A stretch of DNA of 61,295 nucleotides, the filler included, from Dugesia japonica (taxonomy: Eukaryota), in NCBI GenBank assembly GCA_001938525.1. It is 5 parts of 5 records of this genome, joined end to end, with 100 filler letters (N's around TTAATTAATTAA, not from the genome) between each part and the next. Parts side by side here need not be neighbours in the genome. Positions count along the whole stretch, not along the records: positions 1 to 9,326 come from MQRL01616012.1; 4 more parts are not named here. One strand, written 5' to 3'. The notes beneath the pieces were generated by a model that saw nothing but the letters and a program-made list of their open reading frames with translations, made no database searches and was not told the origin of the DNA. Below, piece after piece: positions 819-9,326 of this stretch; positions within the stretch are counted from its first letter, which is position 1; every line of letters begins with the position of its first letter. The position numbers and the translations under genes are program-made.

Positions 819-3085
819 TTGAATACCGAACGAGAAAGCAGAGATAAATTGAATTTGGAAAATCAGTTACGTGAAAAATCGAGAGAACTTTCTGACTACC
901 AAACGCGATTTGANTGTGAATTGACTGAATTACAACATAGATTGAAAGAATTAACTATTGTAAATGACAAATTGAAAATGCAAAACCTAGAAAAAGATCG
1001 GGCTCTCACTGCTCTACAGAGAATTAAAAATGGTGATACTGCTGGAGGTAAAATTTCTTACAATATTTTTGGAGAATTAGTTATAACAATGCTAATAAAA
1101 TTGGAATTGAATTTCGTATTTTCTGGGTTATAAATCGCTCCTGAATGTAGTTAGCGGAATCTAAATAATCAGAAAACATACTAAATAATTCGCTCCTGAA
1201 TATACATAGCAATACAAAATAATTATAATTTAATAATGTCATGAAAATCATCATTCAAAATTTCATTTAAAAATCAACAGATAAGTCGCTCATGTGTATG
1301 ACGCAGTAGTAAATTTTGCGAAAAAAACAGCGACTTATAATCCGGAAAAAGCCGTAATTCATTTAGAAATCAATTAAAAATTCGCATTTTAAACTCATTA
1401 TCATTATGTTTTATGAACAAATTTTACAGATATTCATACGCTTTATATATTTAATTTATATTTTAAGGTTCATTAACTCAATGAAACTGAGTTTTTCATT
1501 TTATAGCATATTTTATCTATAGATAGATGGTGGCGCATTGGATCGCCCAATCAAATTCTGGGTTACATGACCTTGAAAATTTTCGACCAATAAAATCGCT
1601 TAAAAATCAACACACATAATTTTCGACCAATTAAACTCTGGGCCAGTCGACTTGAAAAAATTCCTGGGAGTGACCCAGTTCACCACTATCTATCTACTTT
1701 TATCATTTTGTCAAAAGAAGAATTTATTTAATTTTGTAAATCAAAGTAGTTCCTTGAACATCCATCGTTTTCATGAGTACCTTAAATATATGTAAATTAA
1801 AATGAATTAATCTTTTTTAATAATTTACCATTTTTGGTTTATGGATGAAACTTAGTACTAATGAGTTTGGTTTAAATTCATTACCAACATTTAATTTTTA
1901 CAAAACTTTTCAACTATTTAGTCAAGTTTTACTCATTTTTGACAAAAATATCAGAAAATCATAAAATGTGTTGACAAACAAATTGCGATATAATTAGAAC
2001 ACTTAATCGATAGGTACAATGGTTCTTAATCCATGGTCCGCAAACCCAGGGATTCCGTTGCTTCTTAAGTGATCCGTGGATATTTAAAATTCCTAAATAA
2101 TTTAAGACTAATTAATAGTAGTTGTTGTACTAATTATTTATTAAAATTGTAAACTCAAGTAACTATATTAAAAACATTGTTCGGTTNNNNNNNNNNNNNN
2201 NNNNNNNNNNNNNNNNNNNNNNNNNNNNNNNNNNNNNNNNNNNNNNNNNNNNNNNNNNNNNNNATCGATAATATATGGTAAATAATTACAATGCATAGTT
2301 GATACTCTTGTTAGGCTCATCACTATAACAAAAATACGAAAGGTATCCGTAGTAAATAAGCTGGGTAAATATATATTTCTATTTTTTCATTCGATTTTCA
2401 GTTGATTTGTCATAATTAAATTAAATTATTATTATTATTATTATTATAAAATATTTGTTAGGATTAATATCAACAATAGAATTACTGATTTCTTATTTCA
2501 AAACTGTCCAACAAAATTCGAAATATTTAAACAACCATTTTGTATTAAACTTTTATAACAAATTACTAAAAAATCTAACTATAAAATAACAATATCAAAA
2601 GAGAATTTTAAAAATTAAAAATATTCTTAAATACAAATCCTCACAGTAACAATGCAGTAATTTTTTTCAAATAAGTTTCATTCATTTTTTAGTATGTCTC
2701 TAATATTATCATGAAGATTAGTGTGAGCATTTATTTAGAGATTGTCAAATTAACGTCGAACTCAATATTAAGTAATTCAATTTCAAAGTATGATACAATT
2801 GAAAAAACTCTATAAAATGTTTGAAGCACATGAAAACATTAATAAATAATTATTACCATACTTAGATTGCTATTAAAAATAATAAATATTTTTTATAAAA
2901 TGTTTATTGTGGGAAAATATTAATTTCCACGTTTCCTTGGTTACCTTGTAATTATAAGTATCAAAAATNNNNNNNNNNNNNNNNNNNNNNNNNNNNNNNN
3001 NNNNNNNNNNNNNNNNNNNNNNNNNNNNNNNNNNNNNNNNNNNNNNNNNNNNNNNNNNNNNNNNNNNNNNNNNNNNNNNNNNNNN

Positions 3086-3124
<39 letters not shown>

Positions 3125-6100
3125 TAATAATAATAATAATAATAATATTGATAATAATATAAATTTTATATTTGCATTAATTATTTGTAGAAATCAATAT
3201 GGAAGATAAAGCTACTCGGGTTCTTATTGAGGACACTGAAAGTATGCATCAAGCTTTGAGAAATATTTCCCAGGTTGTTTTGAATGATTCTGATTATTTG
3301 AGTGCAGAGGATTCTGGATTTGATACATTTAGAAGAAGTAATCGTTCACCAAGTCCGAGACGAAATCGCAGTGTCAGTCCCAATTCAAAATCCGCTAAAA
3401 CTCCTCCATTAGCTGATGCCACATTTGCTGCTGTACAATCTGCTTTGAATAAAAAATCTCTTCAGGTATTTCACTAATATATAAGTAATTCTTTGATAAA
3501 TATATATCCTTATTGTGTATTGTGGAGGTCATAATCATTTCTCTAAGATACGATGTATCTTCATTGTTAAAAGAATCCATAAAATTTTTGCGGACAGATT
3601 ATGAGGAGTCAAAACATTATATCGGTAAACATATCCCAGTTTGACCAAATTATCGCTTGTCCTTAGAGTCGTAGAACCTCGTTTTGATATTCTCTAGATT
3701 ATTGAACGAGCGTCCTCGCAGAAAATGTACCGGAAATGGTGTTAGTCAGATGACGCGAGATCAGAGCTGTAAGCTGAATGNGGTAAGAGTTTTATTCCAT
3801 TAAGTTCTCTAATTTCTTCAATCGTCTATCTGGGCGTATGCTGTTTGGCATTGTCTTACAATAAATATATTCGTTTTCGGTTGACCACTGCCGGATATTT
3901 CTTGCATAAAGCCTCATACATTCTATAGAGCTTAACACTATAGAGGTTATATATAAGAATTTTTAAAAAAAGTCGAAATTTGACTTTTATATGGACATTT
4001 GAAATAAGCCATATTATTTATTAATATAGTTTTGTTATTGCTATTTGATTGTTGAATCATTCATTTAAAAATAGTACGAAACCGTATAAATTTGATGAAT
4101 ATTAAATTTAAATAAATTCGGTAGTTAATCGAGAAAAATTTAATTATATTTCATTGTTTTCTGATTGGAAACAACAGTTTTAATAAACATTTAATTAATG
4201 CTAAATGAGAAACTGATTAGCATTTACCACTCCATGTTAGCATGATTTATTTGTTGTCTATTATAATTATGCAAATTTATACACCTCTAAAATTATTCTA
4301 TAATTTAACATTTTTTATTAATTTATATTTTTTAATTTGTTTTTACCACTTGACAATTTCTTTGATACAAATTATCTTCAAATATATATTTATCAAATAA
4401 TACTTTTAAATAAATTCTTTTAGATTATTTACTGGATTTTACTTTATTTCCTTTTGATCTATTTATTTTACTCTATTTAATTAATAATCATGTAAGCTTA
4501 ATATAATATTAATATAACATTATAAATAAGAATTTATTTGTCAAATTTACAATCAAACCATATATAATTTATACTCTACAAGACGTCCATGTTTCTGAAA
4601 AATTTGAATATATTGTCTGATCTAATTTTTCAGAATTCATTTAAAATAAAAGCTTCGATCAAAATTTATTTTTTTGATAATAATTCTATATTTCAACTTT
4701 GTCTTCGTCAGGAATTGACTTTTGAGAAGAAGTCAATTCCTGACGAAGACAAAGTTGAAATATAGAATTATTATCAAAAAATAAAAAAAAAACAAAATTC
4801 GATCGAAGTTTTTATTTTAAATAAATTCTAAAAATCGATCAATGATTATGTCCAACAATTATTCTCGCAATAATTGCAATTGTAAAATAATTTTTTAATA
4901 GTAGAATTCTCAATACAGTAAAACCTCCATATAAAGTACACCATATTTGCAAATAAAATTGTGTACTTTATAGCGATGTACCTTGGATCAAGAGTCAATA
5001 CCCTTTAAAAATAAAATAAACTCGGCTCATTCTCATTTTTTTGTACCTTTAAGAGAGGTGTACTTTTTAGTGGGTGTACTTTATATGGAGGTTTTACTGT
5101 ATAATATAACAAATATCATCATTTCGACTCGTTTAATTATTTCTATTTAAAAAATTTAAATGAATAAAAAATAAGTTTCAACTCCGATCTTTTTAAGTGT
5201 AAAAATGGTTTTTAGAACGAGTTTTATATTTACTTTTAACACAAATTTATTTATAATATTATGGAAGAAAAAATAGATTTGTAGCGCTCATCGTTGAATT
5301 CAATAGATCAGTTGATTTCATTAACTTTATTAATAAAACTCTAACAACAAAAATTTGTTTCTTTAAATAAAGTAAAAATAATTTTCAGTTCAGTTGAAGT
5401 TCTCCATAAAATTATTTATTGAAATATTATAAAACTTTTTTAAAATTAGAATTTATTTCCTAAATATTTTAACTCAACTCGTCTATAAAATTTTAAAATA
5501 TAATAATTCAAAAATATTACATCTTAAATTTTTTAAGAAGCGAAGATTAAAATTGCAGTTCTTTGTTTTTCAATATTTTGACATAGCCTTCTTCAGGAAT
5601 TGTTGTTCAGTAACTACTTTATACAAACTTTGACATGAAGACAGATTTTAAATAAATCTGAGTAAAATCGATTTTCATTGGATTTTAATTGTAATATAAA
5701 ATTAAAATAAATTTGTATTTATTTCTCATTTGTATTTAGCTTCACATTTAGTATTAATTAAAATACTTTTTGCAAAAATTCTAATTTGAAAATACTATTA
5801 ATTTTTAGATTAATTCTTTATTAACAATTTTAAATTAGATAAATCGATTTCAAATTTCCATTAAAAATTTTANNNNNNNNNNNATATATTTTTTTAGAAA
5901 CGTAATAACTTATTTTCAATTTAATTTACATTACAAAAATTATTTTAAGAGAAACCTCAACTGAAACGACAAAAAATTCAACCCGATTTTTTTTTCAAAA
6001 GATCTCACAAATAAAATATAGATTTATCAATGTTGCATAACTCATTGAAGTCACCAAATTTATCTCACTAAGAAATTTGAACTCGTTATTAATTTGATCA

Positions 6101-8264
6101 ATTATCAAATTCATCAACCGTAAAGTTGAAGTTCTCATTTTCGTTTTGATAATTTTTTTTTAATCGACTACCACAATTATTATTTTAAAAATTTTCAAAA
6201 TTAAGTTGAATTTGGTCAACTATTATAAAGTATGAGTAACAATAATAACGTTATATATCTGAAAAAATTTTAAAATAGGCTCCCCTATTAATGAATACAC
6301 TTCTTAAAGAATACACTCCCCTATTAATGAATACACTTCTTAAAGAATACACTCCCCTATTAATGAACTTTAATACACCTAATTCTGGTTTTACGCGAAT
6401 TTGATTTAACGTAATGATTTTTTTGAATCAAATTCTCTTAAAATAAGATCATGTAAAAGCAGAATTGGGTATAGGTTTTTCCAAATTTTTACTTCTGTAC
6501 TTGTGAAGAAATTACTTGAGTTCATTTTAAATATTTAATAATCCTATTTATTAATCCTATTTAATAAATCAGTAGCTTTTAATAACTGTGGTATTTATTT
6601 TTACAATAATGAATAAAGTACAGAGAAATTCTGAAAATATGAATGCCGGAAAATATTACATTTGACTGAAATTTTGAGTTTAATGAAGAATGGTAATTTT
6701 TTAATTTACACGATGTGCACACATGTCAATCCCATCCTAATTAAGATTTTGATTGGCGTGTTTACACGTTGAAAGCAGTTAACTGGTTAAATAAAATAAT
6801 CTCTGTTTACTTTTTAGACCATTATTAATCGTTTCATCATCTGTAATATCAGTAAATTAAATGAATAAACATATAAAAATGTTGTTTATAAAATATAATT
6901 TCATCTTTTATTAATTAGATTCAGGAATTGAAATCTAAATTAAACAGCTCAAAGGATAGTTGTTCTAATTTAAAAAAGCAAATTGAAGATAATGAAAATG
7001 AACGACGAAGACTAGAAAGTCAGGTGTTAGCAATGAGAGATGAAATTGAAAGTTTACGAAGAGATAGAGAAGATAGTCTGAGAGATGCAGATAGATTTAA
7101 GAATTCCTTAAATATTACATCTAACGAGCGTGCTCAATTGGAAAAGGTCAGAACCTCTTTAAATGACCAAATAGAACAACAACTTTCAGAAATGGAAAGA
7201 CTTAAATCCGCTAATCATGAATTACAGAGATTGAGAGAAGTTTTAGAAGACGAACAAGAAGATACCAGAAAAGATTTGGAAAGACAATTGAAAGAAAACG
7301 AAAGATGTCAGCGATGTATTGAAGCATTAGAAGAAAAAGTAAGCCGATTTAAAGAGGATGTTATTAATTACAAAGAAGCTGTCAATAAATATCAATTAGA
7401 AAAGGAAGTTTTGACACAAGAGAAAGATGAAATCGGTGATGCTTTAAGTCGCTGTGAAATTTCCAAGGCTGAATTAGAAATTGAAGTAAATAAACGTCAG
7501 ACAGTTGAAGTGAATTTAGAAGAAAATATTTCCAAATTATCAGCGGATATAGAAGAATTAAATGATAAACGATCTGAAATGCATAGATCAATTAAACAGT
7601 TGGAACATGAACGAAATTCTCTTCTTAATGAAAAGCGTTGCTTAGAACAAGAAAAATGCGGTTTGAAAGATGAATTAGTTCGATCAGAACAAGAAGCTCT
7701 TGGATTATCAAATGAAAAGGCTATTCAGCGTCAAAGAATTGAACAAATGGAAGTCAATACCGAAAGATTGGAAGAAGAATTATCTGACCTAAATAGAGAA
7801 AAACTAGATCTCACGGAACAAGTAAATATAAAGAAAGTTTTAATTATAATAAATATTACTTTTAGATTGGTTGTTTACAAAGACAGAAATCTGCTCTTGC
7901 TGAAGAACTTTTACAGTGTCGTAGAGAATTAGAACGAGCGAATAATAATATCAATAATCTTTCAAAGGAAAAGGAATACCTAACAAAGGAGAAAGGAGAA
8001 CTAGTTGTTCAAGTTACTGCTTGTGAAAGGGAAAATCGTCAACAATCTGAAGTCATTGCTTCATTGAATTCTGATCGAGAACAGCTTGAGGCTACTCTTT
8101 ATGAAGCTCAACAATTAATTATCCAATTAGAAACTAGAAAAGAACAATTAGAAGGAGAAAATCAGGAATTGTTAATTAAAAAAGAGAATTTAACTGGTTA
8201 TTATTATTATTATTNNNNNNNNNNNNNNNNNNNNNNNNNNNNNNNNNNNNNNNNNNNNNNNNNN

Positions 8265-8335
<71 letters not shown>

Positions 8336-8883
8336 GGAGAATTAACAAGATTACGGCAAGAATTTCAAATGGAGTACGAAAAAGTTATTAATTCCAGAGA
8401 ACAGTTGAACGGAAAATATCAACAAATGGAAAAAGAATATAAATTGGCAATTCAACAAGAACGCGATACACATATGGAAGATGTTGATAGATTATCAAAA
8501 TTGAATGAAAACAATCGACTAGGATTCGAAAACGAAAGAGAGGAAATGATTCACAGATTCAGTATGGAGCGAGATGATATTATACAGAATTATGAACAAG
8601 AAAAACAAGAAATGGCCCAAGAAATAATGACAATCCAGAGAGAAAGAGATGATTCATTACTAATGGCGGAGAACGATAAACAACATTCGCTAAGTATATT
8701 AGAACAAGAAAAATGTGCAATCAATGAAAAGCTTATTAAAAATCAATTCGAATTGCAATCAATCGAATCAGAATTGGATAGAGTTAGAAAGGAATCCGCT
8801 AATCGGCAAGAACAAGACAAGCAGAATATTGCAAGCTTATCAAATGAATTGAAATCATTCAGATCACAATTTGAAGAGAAATG
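819..8883 (+). CDS. CROCC: Rootletin (ciliary rootlet coiled-coil protein)-like, partial, 5 internal exons
   Basis: Exons 819-1047, 3191-3465, 6919-7821, 7866-8196 and 8337-8883 have AG/GT boundaries and consistent phases (1,0,0,1). The product is a long heptad coiled coil with rootletin-like segments (ALRNISQVVLND, RSPSPRR..LADATFAAVQSALNKKSLQ, EKGELVVQVTACEREN..LEATLYEAQQ, IQRERDDSLLMAENDKQ). Both ends are missing. Confidence 0.85.
1520..1696. mobile_element. Small MITE-like element
   Basis: Imperfect terminal inverted repeats TAGATAGATGGTG / CACCACTATCTATCTA and internal short direct repeats (AATTTTCGACCAAT). Confidence 0.5.
3600..3935 (-). mobile_element. Decayed mariner transposase, C-terminal fragment
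   Basis: The minus strand reads ..IYLL*DNAKQHTPR..HSAYSSDLASSD*HHF.., matching the mariner motifs DNAxPH and HPPYSPDLAPSDY, with stops. Confidence 0.75.
4682..4716 (-). ncRNA. Minimal type I hammerhead ribozyme motif (inverted twin)
   Basis: Exact reverse complement of 4735-4769. Confidence 0.6.
4735..4769 (+). ncRNA. Minimal type I hammerhead ribozyme motif
   Basis: AATTC-CTGACGA-A-GAC(AAA)GTT-GAAA-TA-TA|GAATT: 5-bp stem I, intact CUGANGA and GAAA core, short stem II, palindromic ATAT stem III region. Confidence 0.6.
4916..5099. mobile_element. pogo/Tigger-type MITE (184 bp)
   Basis: Perfect TIRs CAGTAAAACCTCCATATAAAGTACACC / GGTGTACTTTATATGGAGGTTTTACTG with TA on both sides. Confidence 0.85.
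6279..6367. repeat. Tandem repeat, 36-bp unit, ~2.5 copies
   Basis: CTCCCCTATTAATGAATACACTTCTTAAAGAATACA is repeated. Confidence 0.85.
8198..8334. repeat. (ATT)n microsatellite filling a rootletin intron
   Basis: Pure TTA repeats with an internal N run lie between donor GT 8197 and acceptor AG 8335-8336. Another (AAT)n tract is at 3086-3160. Confidence 0.9.
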
Positions 8884-9326
8884 GTAATGATTTTTATTAT
8901 GTTTTATTTACTTAAAAAATAAAAACTATTTATTTTNNNNNNNNNNNNNNNNNNNNNNNNNNNNNNNNNNNNNNNNNNNNNTTATTCACTTTTTTAAAAA
9001 TTTTAACTATTGATCTCTGAGTGATAAAATTAAATATTTTCAAAATTACGAAAATAAACTAAGGCTTAGATCAAAACAATTTTCAAAAATAATGTTTTTT
9101 TGAAAACATTTTTGTAACTTTAATAAAAATTTTATTAAGAGTCATTTCAAACCTCACGGTAAATTGGTAAGAAACTACATGTTCACTAAACAACAGCTTG
9201 GTGTCATCTTAATGAAATTTGTGAAGTACGAAAAAATGTTCAGATGACTACATTCTAATCTAACGATATAAAATATTATGAACCGTATAGAATCATATTT
9301 AGTACAATTTAAACCTATTTCTTGAT

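What the first reader, a model, noticed from the sequence alone, without database searches (positions are those of the whole stretch)
4626..4887. Back-to-back hammerhead ribozyme pair in a fold-back element inside a rootletin intron
Seen: a ~95-bp-arm palindrome in which each arm carries the same ultra-minimal hammerhead (AATTC CTGACGA A GAC-AAA-GTT GAAA TA TA|GAATT), one per strand. Known: Penelope-like elements carry minimal type I hammerheads with palindromic stem III loops that cleave as dimers, and they often insert with inverted 5' segments. Inference: a transcript from either strand contains a ribozyme plus its exact antisense. It could therefore toggle between a long dsRNA hairpin (ribozyme off, potential Dicer/ADAR substrate) and a cleaving fold. 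The ATAT stem III region and the G10.1-U11.1 pair are more reduced than the usual PLE hammerhead.
Basis: partly seen in the sequence, partly recalled or inferred. Interest (0 to 1): 0.75.

Follow-up and report, generated by a model that had tools for sequence, protein, structure and literature searches.

The report
Penelope retroelement stub with hammerhead motifs
The palindrome is one of thousands of dead copies of the tail end of a Penelope-like jumping gene, inserted as two head-to-head copies that each carry that element's usual tiny hammerhead-ribozyme motif; this is an ordinary kind of repeat, although junctions in sister copies hint that the ribozyme really cuts in the cell.

Summary
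Window 4627-4721 and 4730-4834 form a near-perfect palindrome, and each arm carries the same hammerhead-like string, one per strand.

It is not a device of the host gene. It is one 257-bp insertion (4631-4887, 8-bp target duplication) of a repeat with thousands of copies in this 854-Mb genome.

The repeat is the about 163-nt 3' end of an abundant Penelope-like retroelement (PLE). In longer copies it follows directly after a GIY-YIG endonuclease ORF. Copies show a constant 3' end, 5' truncation, 8-16-bp target duplications, and an inverted 5' copy that lacks a 57-nt tail. This is the published PLE insertion architecture, so the "pair" is a by-product of integration.

The motif fits the published PLE "min-hammerhead" in most respects:
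- an extra nucleotide after A9;
- G10.1-C11.1 in most copies;
- palindromic 15.2-16.2;
- a 5-6-bp helix I.

Helix II is unusually short at 3 bp.

Variation between subfamilies falls on N7, loop 2 and H17. In sister copies, arm ends pile up on the predicted cleavage nucleotide, which suggests cleavage in vivo.

The window copy is decayed (G-U at 10.1-11.1) and would fold as a -110 kcal/mol hairpin. The proposed toggle between hairpin and ribozyme is unsupported.

The parts
4623..4630 (.). left copy of the 8-bp target-site duplication (TAATTTTT)
   Evidence: Read. The same 8-mer follows the element's 3' end. The TSD script reports it for WIN.
4631..4721 (-). inverted arm: reverse complement of about the first 105 nt of the unit, lacking the 57-nt tail
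   Evidence: Inverted repeats I1 and I2. Family alignment and minus-strand matches start at 4626/4627.
4682..4716 (-). hammerhead-like motif of the inverted arm; predicted cut between 4687 and 4686 on the - strand
   Evidence: Descriptor hit on the - strand. Arm P0_L in the alignment.
4722..4729 (.). junction between the two arms (hairpin loop); this is the most variable part among copies
   Evidence: The family alignment shows indels and unrelated fillers here.
4726..4887 (+). direct copy of the about 163-nt unit, the 3'-terminal module of the Penelope-like element, ending in the constant ...GCAATTGTAAAA
   Evidence: Matches of 76-87% identity to many genome copies. The same unit follows the GIY-YIG ORF in L102, L103, L104 and L107.
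4735..4769 (+). hammerhead-like motif of the direct arm: helix I AAUUC/GAAUU, CUGACGA, extra A, helix II GAC/GUU with AAA loop, GAAA, UA, U16.1 A17; predicted cut after 4764
4831..4887 (+). 'tail': the 3' 57 nt, present only in the direct arm
   Evidence: In most copies the inverted arm stops at about unit position 100-110. L005 is an exception with tails on both sides.
4888..4895 (.). right copy of the 8-bp target-site duplication

Best explanation
Window 4631-4887 is a dead insertion of the about 163-nt 3'-terminal module of an abundant GIY-YIG Penelope-like retroelement (PLE). The module corresponds to a solo pseudo-LTR or 3'-UTR unit.

The element integrates by target-primed reverse transcription. 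Integration leaves a direct copy that ends at the RNA's 3' end and, head to head with it, an inverted copy. The inverted copy starts about 57 nt inside the 3' end and runs to the RNA's 5' end. That gives a palindrome flanked by a short target duplication.

The unit begins with the element's own minimal type I hammerhead motif, so the palindrome automatically carries one motif per strand. The pair is a by-product, not a device.

At family level the motif behaves like a real PLE min-hammerhead that cuts some source transcripts after H17. This step is inferred from the pattern of conservation and from insertion junctions. It has not been shown biochemically.

The window copy itself is old (about 15% diverged), has G-U at 10.1-11.1 in both arms, and as part of the host intron would fold into a long hairpin. 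I expect it to be catalytically inert.
For: Repeat family:
- 3539 first-look candidates for the element; the scored ones are 76-87% identical.
- The exact 35-nt intact motif occurs 2154 times in the genome, and the reversed control occurs 0 times.

Retroposon signature:
- Constant 3' end and variable 5' extent.
- Monomer units without an inverted arm (L037, L045, L053, L057, L059, L069, L078, L084, L087, L091).
- Exact target duplications of 8-16 bp in 38 of 87 copies, 26 of them 10 bp or longer.

PLE link:
- The unit lies 120-230 nt downstream of, and in the same orientation as, GIY-YIG ORFs in L102, L103, L104 and L107.
- That endonuclease has 13705 candidates in the genome, and all 150 scored have E < 1e-41.
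- An RVT_1 fragment lies in L110.
- The architecture matches the published PLE description: 5' truncation, an adjacent inverted 5'-truncated copy, and a tail on one side (PMC8557442; PMC11167929).

Hammerhead:
- All four hallmarks listed by Cervera and de la Pena 2014 (PMC4209133) are present: a nucleotide between A9 and G10.1; G10.1-C11.1 (71 of 102 arms, plus 19 G-U); palindromic 15.2-16.2; and grouping into consensus families.
- A second PLE family in the same genome has a textbook min-HHR at the same place after its endonuclease (L106, position 768).
- A 70%-identical relative (L110) keeps the whole core and changes helix I on both sides, from A-U to U-A at 2.5/1.5.
- Among 102 arms, the three most variable of the 36 motif columns are H17 (A49/C48/T3/G2), the third loop-2 base and N7. 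These are exactly the unconstrained positions; my arithmetic gives p about 0.003.
- 15.2/16.2 changes UA to AU together in 5 arms.

Junction evidence:
- With anchors at unit positions 50-59, about 12-15 of the 50 listed short-junction loci have both arms ending at unit position 40 or 41. Position 40 is G1.1, the first base after the predicted cut. These junctions carry short fillers, and other ends are scattered.
- With anchors at 41-50, about 26 of about 42 family loci do so, in both the C17 and the A17 subfamily.
Against: - No Rfam hammerhead model matches the window or any copy, even at E <= 10. This is weak evidence, because Rfam also misses the textbook min-HHR in L106.
- Helix II is only 3 bp with a 3-nt loop, against 6-8 bp in published PLE min-HHRs.
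- Helices I+II are worth only -1.0 kcal/mol (window) to -2.8 kcal/mol (L087). The hammerhead fold lies 5 kcal/mol above the unit's MFE and has about zero ensemble probability.
- Head-to-tail tandems that could supply a dimer partner in cis are rare, at 3 distinct loci.
- Most copies, including both window arms, contain the uncut motif, so uncut RNA is the main template.
- The position-40 hot spot could be a transcription start or a reverse-transcriptase stop instead of a cleavage end.
- Junction tallies were made by eye from listed strings, and some loci are assembly duplicates.
- RT and EN were not seen in one intact ORF.
Confidence: 0.65

Rival explanations
1. This is the same PLE-derived insertion, but the CUGANGA...GAAA string is not a working ribozyme. 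The first 44 nt of the unit would be conserved for another reason, such as a promoter-proximal element or a reverse-transcriptase or RNP binding site. The pile-up of arm ends at unit position 40 would then be a transcription start or a polymerase stop.
For: - The hammerhead fold is thermodynamically negligible.
- Helix II is 3 bp.
- No Rfam hit.
- The 3' block of the unit (positions 76-163) is just as conserved without any ribozyme motif.
- Published PLE min-HHRs cut poorly in vitro.
- For the Anolis element, cleavage is not needed for insertion and no cleaved ends were seen in RNA-seq.
- The strict descriptor would hit about 30 times by chance in a genome of this size; this is scaled by me.
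Against: - Variation falls on exactly N7, loop 2 and H17, and G17 is nearly absent.
- All four published hallmarks are present.
- A clear min-HHR sits at the same position in a second PLE family.
- The core is retained, with a compensatory helix I change, in L110.
- The hot spot coincides to the nucleotide with the cut predicted beforehand, in both the C17 and A17 subfamilies.
Confidence: 0.27
2. One reading: the back-to-back pair is a functional unit. Its transcript would toggle between a long dsRNA hairpin (a Dicer or ADAR substrate) and a self-cleaving fold, possibly acting on the host intron.
For: - Any transcript through the element does contain a motif plus its exact antisense.
- The hairpin is long and nearly perfect.
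- Rfam miRNA-precursor models give sub-threshold hits, as for any clean hairpin.
Against: - The palindrome arises at integration and is not maintained. There are monomers, shifted junctions and one-sided tails, and arms differ by 13.8% on average.
- The antisense arm always precedes the sense arm.
- The hairpin outweighs the hammerhead helices by about 100 kcal/mol.
- This copy is one of thousands of neutral-looking insertions and carries a weakened 10.1-11.1 pair.
Confidence: 0.03
3. A fold-back DNA transposon or MITE that moves by cut and paste, with the arms serving as terminal inverted repeats.
For: - Palindromic structure.
- High copy number.
- AT-rich targets.
- One copy (L005) has a full palindrome with both tails.
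Against: - Target duplications vary from 8 to 16 bp.
- The 3' end is constant while the 5' end is variable.
- 5'-truncated monomers carry their own duplications, e.g. L070, which starts at unit position 64 with a 10-bp TSD.
- The unit is physically continuous with a GIY-YIG ORF and its 3' UTR.
Confidence: 0.02
4. A hairpin-RNA or miRNA-like gene that happens to be repeat-derived.
For: Sub-threshold Rfam hits: mir-4798 at 50 bits against a gathering score of 75, and MIR6445 at 40 against 100.
Against: - All hits are below the gathering scores, and both strands hit unrelated miRNA families, which is typical of any perfect hairpin.
- There is no conservation of a mature arm beyond that of the repeat family.
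Confidence: 0.03

Closest known systems
Minimal hammerhead ribozymes (min-HHR) of Penelope-like elements (Cervera and de la Pena 2014, PMC4209133)
   Same: - Type I topology with no loop 3.
- Palindromic 15.2-16.2.
- An unpaired nucleotide between A9 and G10.1.
- G10.1-C11.1.
- Helix I of 5-6 bp.
- Location in the PLE terminal repeat, with thousands of dispersed copies grouped in consensus families.
- Dual motifs on opposite strands 100-700 bp apart were already noted in Schistosoma.
   Different: - Helix II is 3 bp with a 3-nt loop instead of 6-8 bp, so the fold is far less stable.
- Here the two motifs are only about 20-30 nt apart across a palindrome centre.
- Activity is untested.
Penelope-like element insertion architecture (Craig et al. 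2021, PMC8557442; Anolis Poseidon in vitro work 2024, PMC11167929)
   Same: - High 5' truncation.
- An inverted 5'-truncated copy abutting the direct copy.
- A terminal 'tail' present on one side only.
- GIY-YIG endonuclease.
- A bias for AT-rich and microsatellite targets.
- Two reverse-transcription start sites would explain the tail.
   Different: - The tail is about 57 nt rather than 30-40 nt.
- The overwhelming majority of copies are just the last about 163 nt, which behaves like a solo-pLTR, SINE-like parasite with a discrete 5' end.
Animal non-LTR retrozymes (Cervera and de la Pena 2020, PMC7229834; 2026 preprint 10.64898/2026.07.22.740005)
   Same: - Short, non-autonomous and PLE-related.
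- Carry a type I hammerhead.
   Different: - Retrozymes are head-to-tail tandem arrays that give circular RNAs.
- Here tandems are almost absent, at 3 distinct loci. Copies are dispersed monomers or inverted dimers.
Rfam Hammerhead_1 (RF00163)
   Same: - Same catalytic boxes and type I topology.
- The genome has one bona fide member, at G000 C412330:806-848, 37 bits.
   Different: - The candidate scores below E = 10.
- The model expects a 4-bp helix II, no extra nucleotide after A9, and a helix III hairpin.

Membership tests
PLE-type minimal hammerhead (min-HHR) | Catalytic boxes CUGANGA and GAAA, plus a U16.1-H17 cleavage site | tested here: met
   Present in both window arms. The core is intact in 57 of 102 family arms. 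H17 is A49/C48/T3/G2.
PLE-type minimal hammerhead (min-HHR) | One unpaired nucleotide between A9 and G10.1 | tested here: met
   An A in 99 of 102 arms. The second PLE family (L106) has a U there.
PLE-type minimal hammerhead (min-HHR) | G10.1-C11.1 base pair | tested here: met
   G-C in 71 and G-U in 19 of 102 arms. The window copy has G-U in both arms.
PLE-type minimal hammerhead (min-HHR) | Palindromic 15.2-16.2, giving a dimeric helix III | tested here: met
   U-A in 90 arms and A-U in 5 arms (a change on both sides). Only 7 arms are unpaired.
PLE-type minimal hammerhead (min-HHR) | Long helix II (6-8 bp), which gives the motif its stability | tested here: not met
   Only 3 bp (GAC/GUC) with an AAA or AAG loop in all subfamilies. 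Fold energy is -1.0 to -2.8 kcal/mol.
PLE-type minimal hammerhead (min-HHR) | Compensatory changes in helices I and II across families | tested here: inconclusive
   Within the family the helices hardly vary. The U1.5-to-C subfamily is not compensated. The single divergent relative L110 has A-U to U-A at 2.5/1.5 and a sixth pair. In one subfamily 1.6 changes from A to G and adds a C-G pair.
PLE-type minimal hammerhead (min-HHR) | Self-cleavage after H17 | not testable with these tools
   Indirect evidence only: arm ends in sister copies cluster on G1.1.
Rfam Hammerhead_1 / hammerhead clan covariance models | Score at or near the family threshold | tested here: not met
   No hit at E <= 10 on the window, on 4722-4790 alone, or on intact copies. 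The control, the clear min-HHR in L106, is missed too.
Penelope-like element (EN+) | GIY-YIG endonuclease encoded just upstream of the terminal repeat | tested here: met
   PF01541 matches in L102, L103, L104 and L107, with the unit 120-230 nt downstream on the same strand.
Penelope-like element (EN+) | Reverse transcriptase in the same ORF as the endonuclease | tested here: inconclusive
   Only an RVT_1 fragment was found, in L110, on the strand opposite the nearby GIY-YIG in a rearranged locus. Longer copies could not be fetched.
Penelope-like element (EN+) | 5' truncation, an adjacent inverted 5'-truncated copy, a one-sided tail and variable target duplications | tested here: met
Non-LTR retrozyme | Head-to-tail tandem repeats of the hammerhead unit | tested here: not met
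   The pattern 'unit end, 0-40 nt, unit start' has 6 matches, about 3 distinct loci, against 2154 intact motifs.
MITE / fold-back DNA transposon | Fixed-length target duplication and symmetric terminal inverted repeats | tested here: not met
   TSDs of 8-16 bp. Ends are asymmetric, and there are monomers and truncated copies.
miRNA precursor families (mir-4798, MIR6445 and others) | Score above Rfam's gathering threshold | tested here: not met
   50.2 against 75 bits, 40.5 against 100, 37 against 66, and 29 against 70.

The most novel reading that the evidence does not exclude
The insertion junctions are fossils of ribozyme action. A PLE hammerhead with only a 3-bp helix II would cut its transcripts after H17 in vivo. 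The resulting RNAs, which begin at G1.1, would then be reverse-transcribed from both ends of the target cut. By my rough scaling, that would account for about one in ten of the inverted-dimer insertions that carry the exact anchors of the GTTATCC subfamily. If so, this would be in vivo evidence for PLE min-hammerhead cleavage, which published in vitro and RNA-seq work has not provided. It would also show that far less helix II is needed in the cell than in the test tube.
Probability: 0.5. Interest if true: 0.55.

Novelty: new member of a known kind. Interest (0 to 1): 0.4.

Why it matters
For the window itself this matters little. It is an ordinary dead retroelement stub in an intron, and the 'ribozyme pair' needs no special explanation.

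For the field, two points may be useful.

1. A PLE family with thousands of copies carries a min-hammerhead whose helix II is cut down to 3 bp, yet it keeps every catalytic position. That bears on how much structure such ribozymes need and on whether proteins help them fold.

2. The ends of the inverted arms in sister copies cluster on the exact nucleotide predicted to follow the cut. Junction surveys of this kind can be run on any assembly. They offer a cheap in vivo read-out for a ribozyme class whose cellular activity is still undemonstrated.

Tried and rejected
- Rfam scans of the window, of the motif alone and of intact copies gave no hammerhead hit. I do not take this as evidence against the motif, because the clear min-HHR of L106 is missed too.

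- The miRNA-family hits are generic hairpin matches below threshold.

- My first junction test, on 70 fetched loci, was inconclusive. BLAST ends were fuzzy, and several junctions sat on short palindromes (GATATC at unit 34-39, AATT at 41-44, AAAATTTT at 66-73), which microhomology could explain. Only the genome-wide pattern lists showed the sharp peak that retains the C/G of position 40 and carries fillers.

- I planned a test comparing variants shared by both arms with variants private to one arm. I dropped it because arms are not always copied from one template: three pairs (L006, L009, L022) mix subfamilies.

- Inheritance from a palindromic master RNA was considered. It is disfavoured by the monomers, the shifted junctions and the one-sided tails, but it is not excluded for some copies.

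- Attempts to name the host gene or the organism failed.

- The Lunse et al. paper on dimeric PLE hammerheads is not in the held library.

- After no more genome DNA could be fetched. As a result, no full-length PLE, no scripted junction histogram and no family of the divergent L110 unit could be obtained.
Full report
**1. What is in the window**

Positions 4627-4721 and 4730-4834 are a near-perfect inverted repeat: 57 nt at 96% and 49 nt at 88% complementarity. As RNA, the region folds into a single hairpin of -110.4 kcal/mol, z = -21.7.

- On the + strand: AAUUC (4735-4739), CUGACGA (4740-4746), an extra A (4747), GAC-AAA-GUU (4748-4756), GAAA (4757-4760), U-A-U (4761-4763), A17 (4764), then GAAUU (4765-4769).
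- On the - strand: the mirror image, from 4716 down to 4682.

A descriptor as strict as this motif hit once in 3000 dinucleotide shuffles of the window, and a looser one hit 0.01 times per window. On its own, though, one such hit is not rare across a large scan.

**2. It is a repeat, and a retroposon**

A search of the window's own 854-Mb assembly gave 3539 first-look candidates. All scored ones were 76-87% identical, and most matched on both strands. The exact 35-nt intact motif occurs 1119 + 1035 times, and its reversed control occurs 0 times.

Alignment of copies with their flanks shows three things:
- a constant 3' end (...GCAATTGTAAAA, window 4887);
- a variable left end;
- unrelated flanks.

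The window copy is 4631-4887, bounded by the 8-bp duplication TAATTTTT at 4623-4630 and 4888-4895.

Of 87 copies with a readable 3' flank, 38 have an exact duplication of 8-16 bp, and 26 of those are 10 bp or longer. A sample drawn with the 3' tail alone, which is unbiased for 5' extent, contains several classes:
- plain monomers of about 163 nt with no inverted arm;
- inverted dimers like the window's;
- 5'-truncated monomers with their own duplications;
- dimers with shifted junctions.

Variable-length duplications together with 5' truncation are the mark of target-primed reverse transcription. They are not the mark of a cut-and-paste fold-back element.

**3. It is the tail end of a Penelope-like element**

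Pfam GIY-YIG matches in the genome belong to repeated loci.
- In L102, L103, L104 and L107 the unit lies 120-230 nt downstream of the GIY-YIG ORF, on the same strand.
- The AT-rich stretch between ORF and unit is also found upstream of some 'monomer' copies (L073, L093, L090).
- That endonuclease has 13705 candidates in the genome, and all 150 scored have E < 1e-41.
- An RVT_1 fragment sits in L110.

RT and EN in one ORF are therefore not shown.

The insertion anatomy matches the published description of PLEs: strong 5' truncation, an inverted 5'-truncated copy directly adjacent, and a terminal tail on one side only (PMC8557442). The Anolis element cleaves and extends both DNA strands and starts reverse transcription at two sites, which defines the tail (PMC11167929).

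In this family:
- The inverted arm usually starts at unit position about 100-110, so the last 57 nt (window 4831-4887) are present in the direct arm only.
- The two arms of a copy are usually of the same subfamily. They differ on average at 2.0 of 12 diagnostic columns, against 5.25 for random pairs.
- Three pairs (L006, L009, L022) mix subfamilies.
- Arms differ by 13.8% overall.

The palindrome is therefore made at integration. Whether this happens by a template jump or by priming from the second DNA end, I cannot tell. It is not maintained afterwards.

**4. Is the motif a hammerhead?**

*Evidence for*

The motif shows every feature that Cervera and de la Pena list as emerging from PLE min-hammerheads (PMC4209133):
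- a nucleotide between A9 and G10.1 (an A in 99 of 102 arms);
- G10.1-C11.1 (71 arms G-C, 19 G-U);
- palindromic 15.2-16.2 (90 arms U-A; 5 arms changed on both sides to A-U);
- a helix I of 5 bp, or 6 bp in the subfamily where 1.6 is G;
- grouping into consensus families.

That paper also noted pairs of min-hammerheads on opposite strands in Schistosoma.

A second PLE family in this genome (L106) has a textbook min-hammerhead about 120 nt after the end of its GIY-YIG match. It has helix II GACGG/CCGUC, an extra U after A9, and palindromic UUAA.

A 70%-identical relative of the unit (L110) keeps the entire core. Its helix I becomes AUAUUC/GAAUAU, with an A-U to U-A exchange at 2.5/1.5.

Among the 36 motif columns in 102 arms, the three most variable are H17 (A49, C48, T3, G2), the third loop-2 base (A76, G24) and N7 (C80, A15). 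These are the positions a hammerhead leaves free. The chance that the top three all fall among the six free columns is about 0.003 by my arithmetic. Just downstream, at unit positions 45-75, almost every column differs between subfamilies.

*Evidence against*

- Helix II is only 3 bp with a 3-nt loop, against 6-8 bp in published PLE min-hammerheads.
- Helices I+II are worth -1.0 kcal/mol in the window copy and -2.8 kcal/mol in an intact copy.
- The hammerhead fold lies 5 kcal/mol above the unit's MFE and has no weight in the ensemble.
- Rfam finds nothing. It also misses the L106 motif, so this says little.
- Tandem units that could give a dimer in cis are nearly absent.

**5. Junctions as a record of RNA ends**

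If some template RNAs had been cut after H17, their cDNAs should stop at G1.1, which is unit position 40 (window 4765).

In the fetched loci the picture was unclear. Junctions also sat on short palindromes.

Genome-wide pattern lists gave a sharper picture.
- With anchors at unit 41-50 on both arms and 0-40 nt between them, there are 306 loci, against 7 for the reversed control. Among about 42 family loci in the first 50 listed, about 26 have both arms ending at position 40 or 41. Typically they retain the C and/or the G of position 40 and carry a 1-15-nt filler. Fillers are often a short re-copy of the adjacent bases. This holds in both the C17 and the A17 subfamily.
- With anchors further out, at unit 50-59, and 0-60 nt between them, there are 147 loci. 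About 12-15 of the 50 listed (some may be assembly duplicates) have both arms at 40/41. About 21 arms end exactly at 40, and the other ends scatter over positions 22-49.
- With the same anchors, 107 loci have spacings of 61-90 nt and 136 have 91-120 nt. The last class is the full-length palindrome.

From these counts, roughly one inverted dimer in ten of that subfamily ends at the predicted cut on both arms.

These tallies were made by eye from the listed strings. The peak is nevertheless unmistakable, and it coincides to the nucleotide with a site predicted beforehand.

A transcription start or a polymerase stop at that base is the alternative. AATT microhomology alone does not explain retention of the flanking C and G, or the fillers.

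**6. Verdict on mechanism**

Shown:
- the repeat family;
- the retroposon signature;
- continuity with a GIY-YIG element;
- the fit of the motif to the published min-hammerhead pattern;
- the peak of arm ends at G1.1.

Inferred:
- the motif self-cleaves in source transcripts (I put this at about 0.6-0.65);
- the inverted arm comes from a second priming event or a template jump;
- unit position 1 is the transcription start of a solo terminal repeat.

The window copy is about 15% diverged and has G-U at 10.1-11.1 in both arms. It lies in an intron of a coiled-coil protein gene on the + strand. The rootletin assignment is unverified.

On either strand the antisense arm is transcribed first, and the hairpin outweighs the ribozyme helices by about 100 kcal/mol. 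The proposed toggle has no support.

The genome is AT-rich, at 20-32% GC in this window. It is not human.

**7. Novelty**

Minimal hammerheads in PLE terminal repeats, inverted 5' copies and one-sided tails are all published.

New here:
- a family with an exceptionally short helix II;
- the junction signature that may record cleavage in vivo.

I file the finding as a new member of a known kind, of modest interest.

Noticed in passing
window 4913-5102: Directly downstream of the PLE stub lies a second small element. It has perfect 30-bp terminal inverted repeats (4913-4942 and 5073-5102), CAGT...ACTG termini and a flanking TA on each side. It looks like a Tc1/mariner-type MITE of about 186 bp.
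   Followed up: partly
window 6374-6473: Another roughly 100-nt hairpin-forming stretch gives sub-threshold Rfam MIR5512 hits on both strands (31 and 28 bits against a gathering score of 139). It is probably another palindromic repeat.
   Followed up: no
G000 C412330:806-848 (L030): This is the one hit to Rfam Hammerhead_1 above threshold found in this genome (37.1 bits; only 73 of about 62,000 candidates were scored). It has helix II GAUC/GGUC and a palindromic CUAG loop 3, on a 909-bp contig. Its element context was not examined.
   Followed up: partly
L106:760-800; L109:1263-1420: A second PLE family has a canonical min-hammerhead after its GIY-YIG domain. In L109 its 3' UTR carries a nested, inverted fragment of the first family's tail, and its own hammerhead is partly deleted.
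   Followed up: partly
flanks of L020, L023, L026, L044, L050, L052, L053, L096: Many copies sit in (ATT)n/(TAA)n microsatellites, and the first bases after the 3' end are often YAAT. This suggests a target preference of the endonuclease, as reported for other PLE clades.
   Followed up: no
L054 vs L077; L010 vs L008; L051 vs L072; C297937 vs C297938: The same insertion, with the same flanks, appears on two contigs. The assembly therefore holds many duplicated (probably allelic) contigs, which inflates copy counts.
   Followed up: no
window 6928-7839, 8369-8884, 3199-3474, 819-1010 (+ strand): The host exons encode a long coiled-coil protein. Pfam gives PUMA_CC just above cut-off (35.1 against 30.1 bits) and no Rootletin match. 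The word search of 5.8 billion proteins gave no hit at E <= 0.001.
   Followed up: partly
C165108 and similar strings: Some copies lack unit positions about 39-49 in both arms. The deletion lies between two ATATC repeats, so it was already present in the template RNA. This points to a source-level deletion variant that removes the cleavage site and the 3' strand of helix I, yet was still copied.
   Followed up: no
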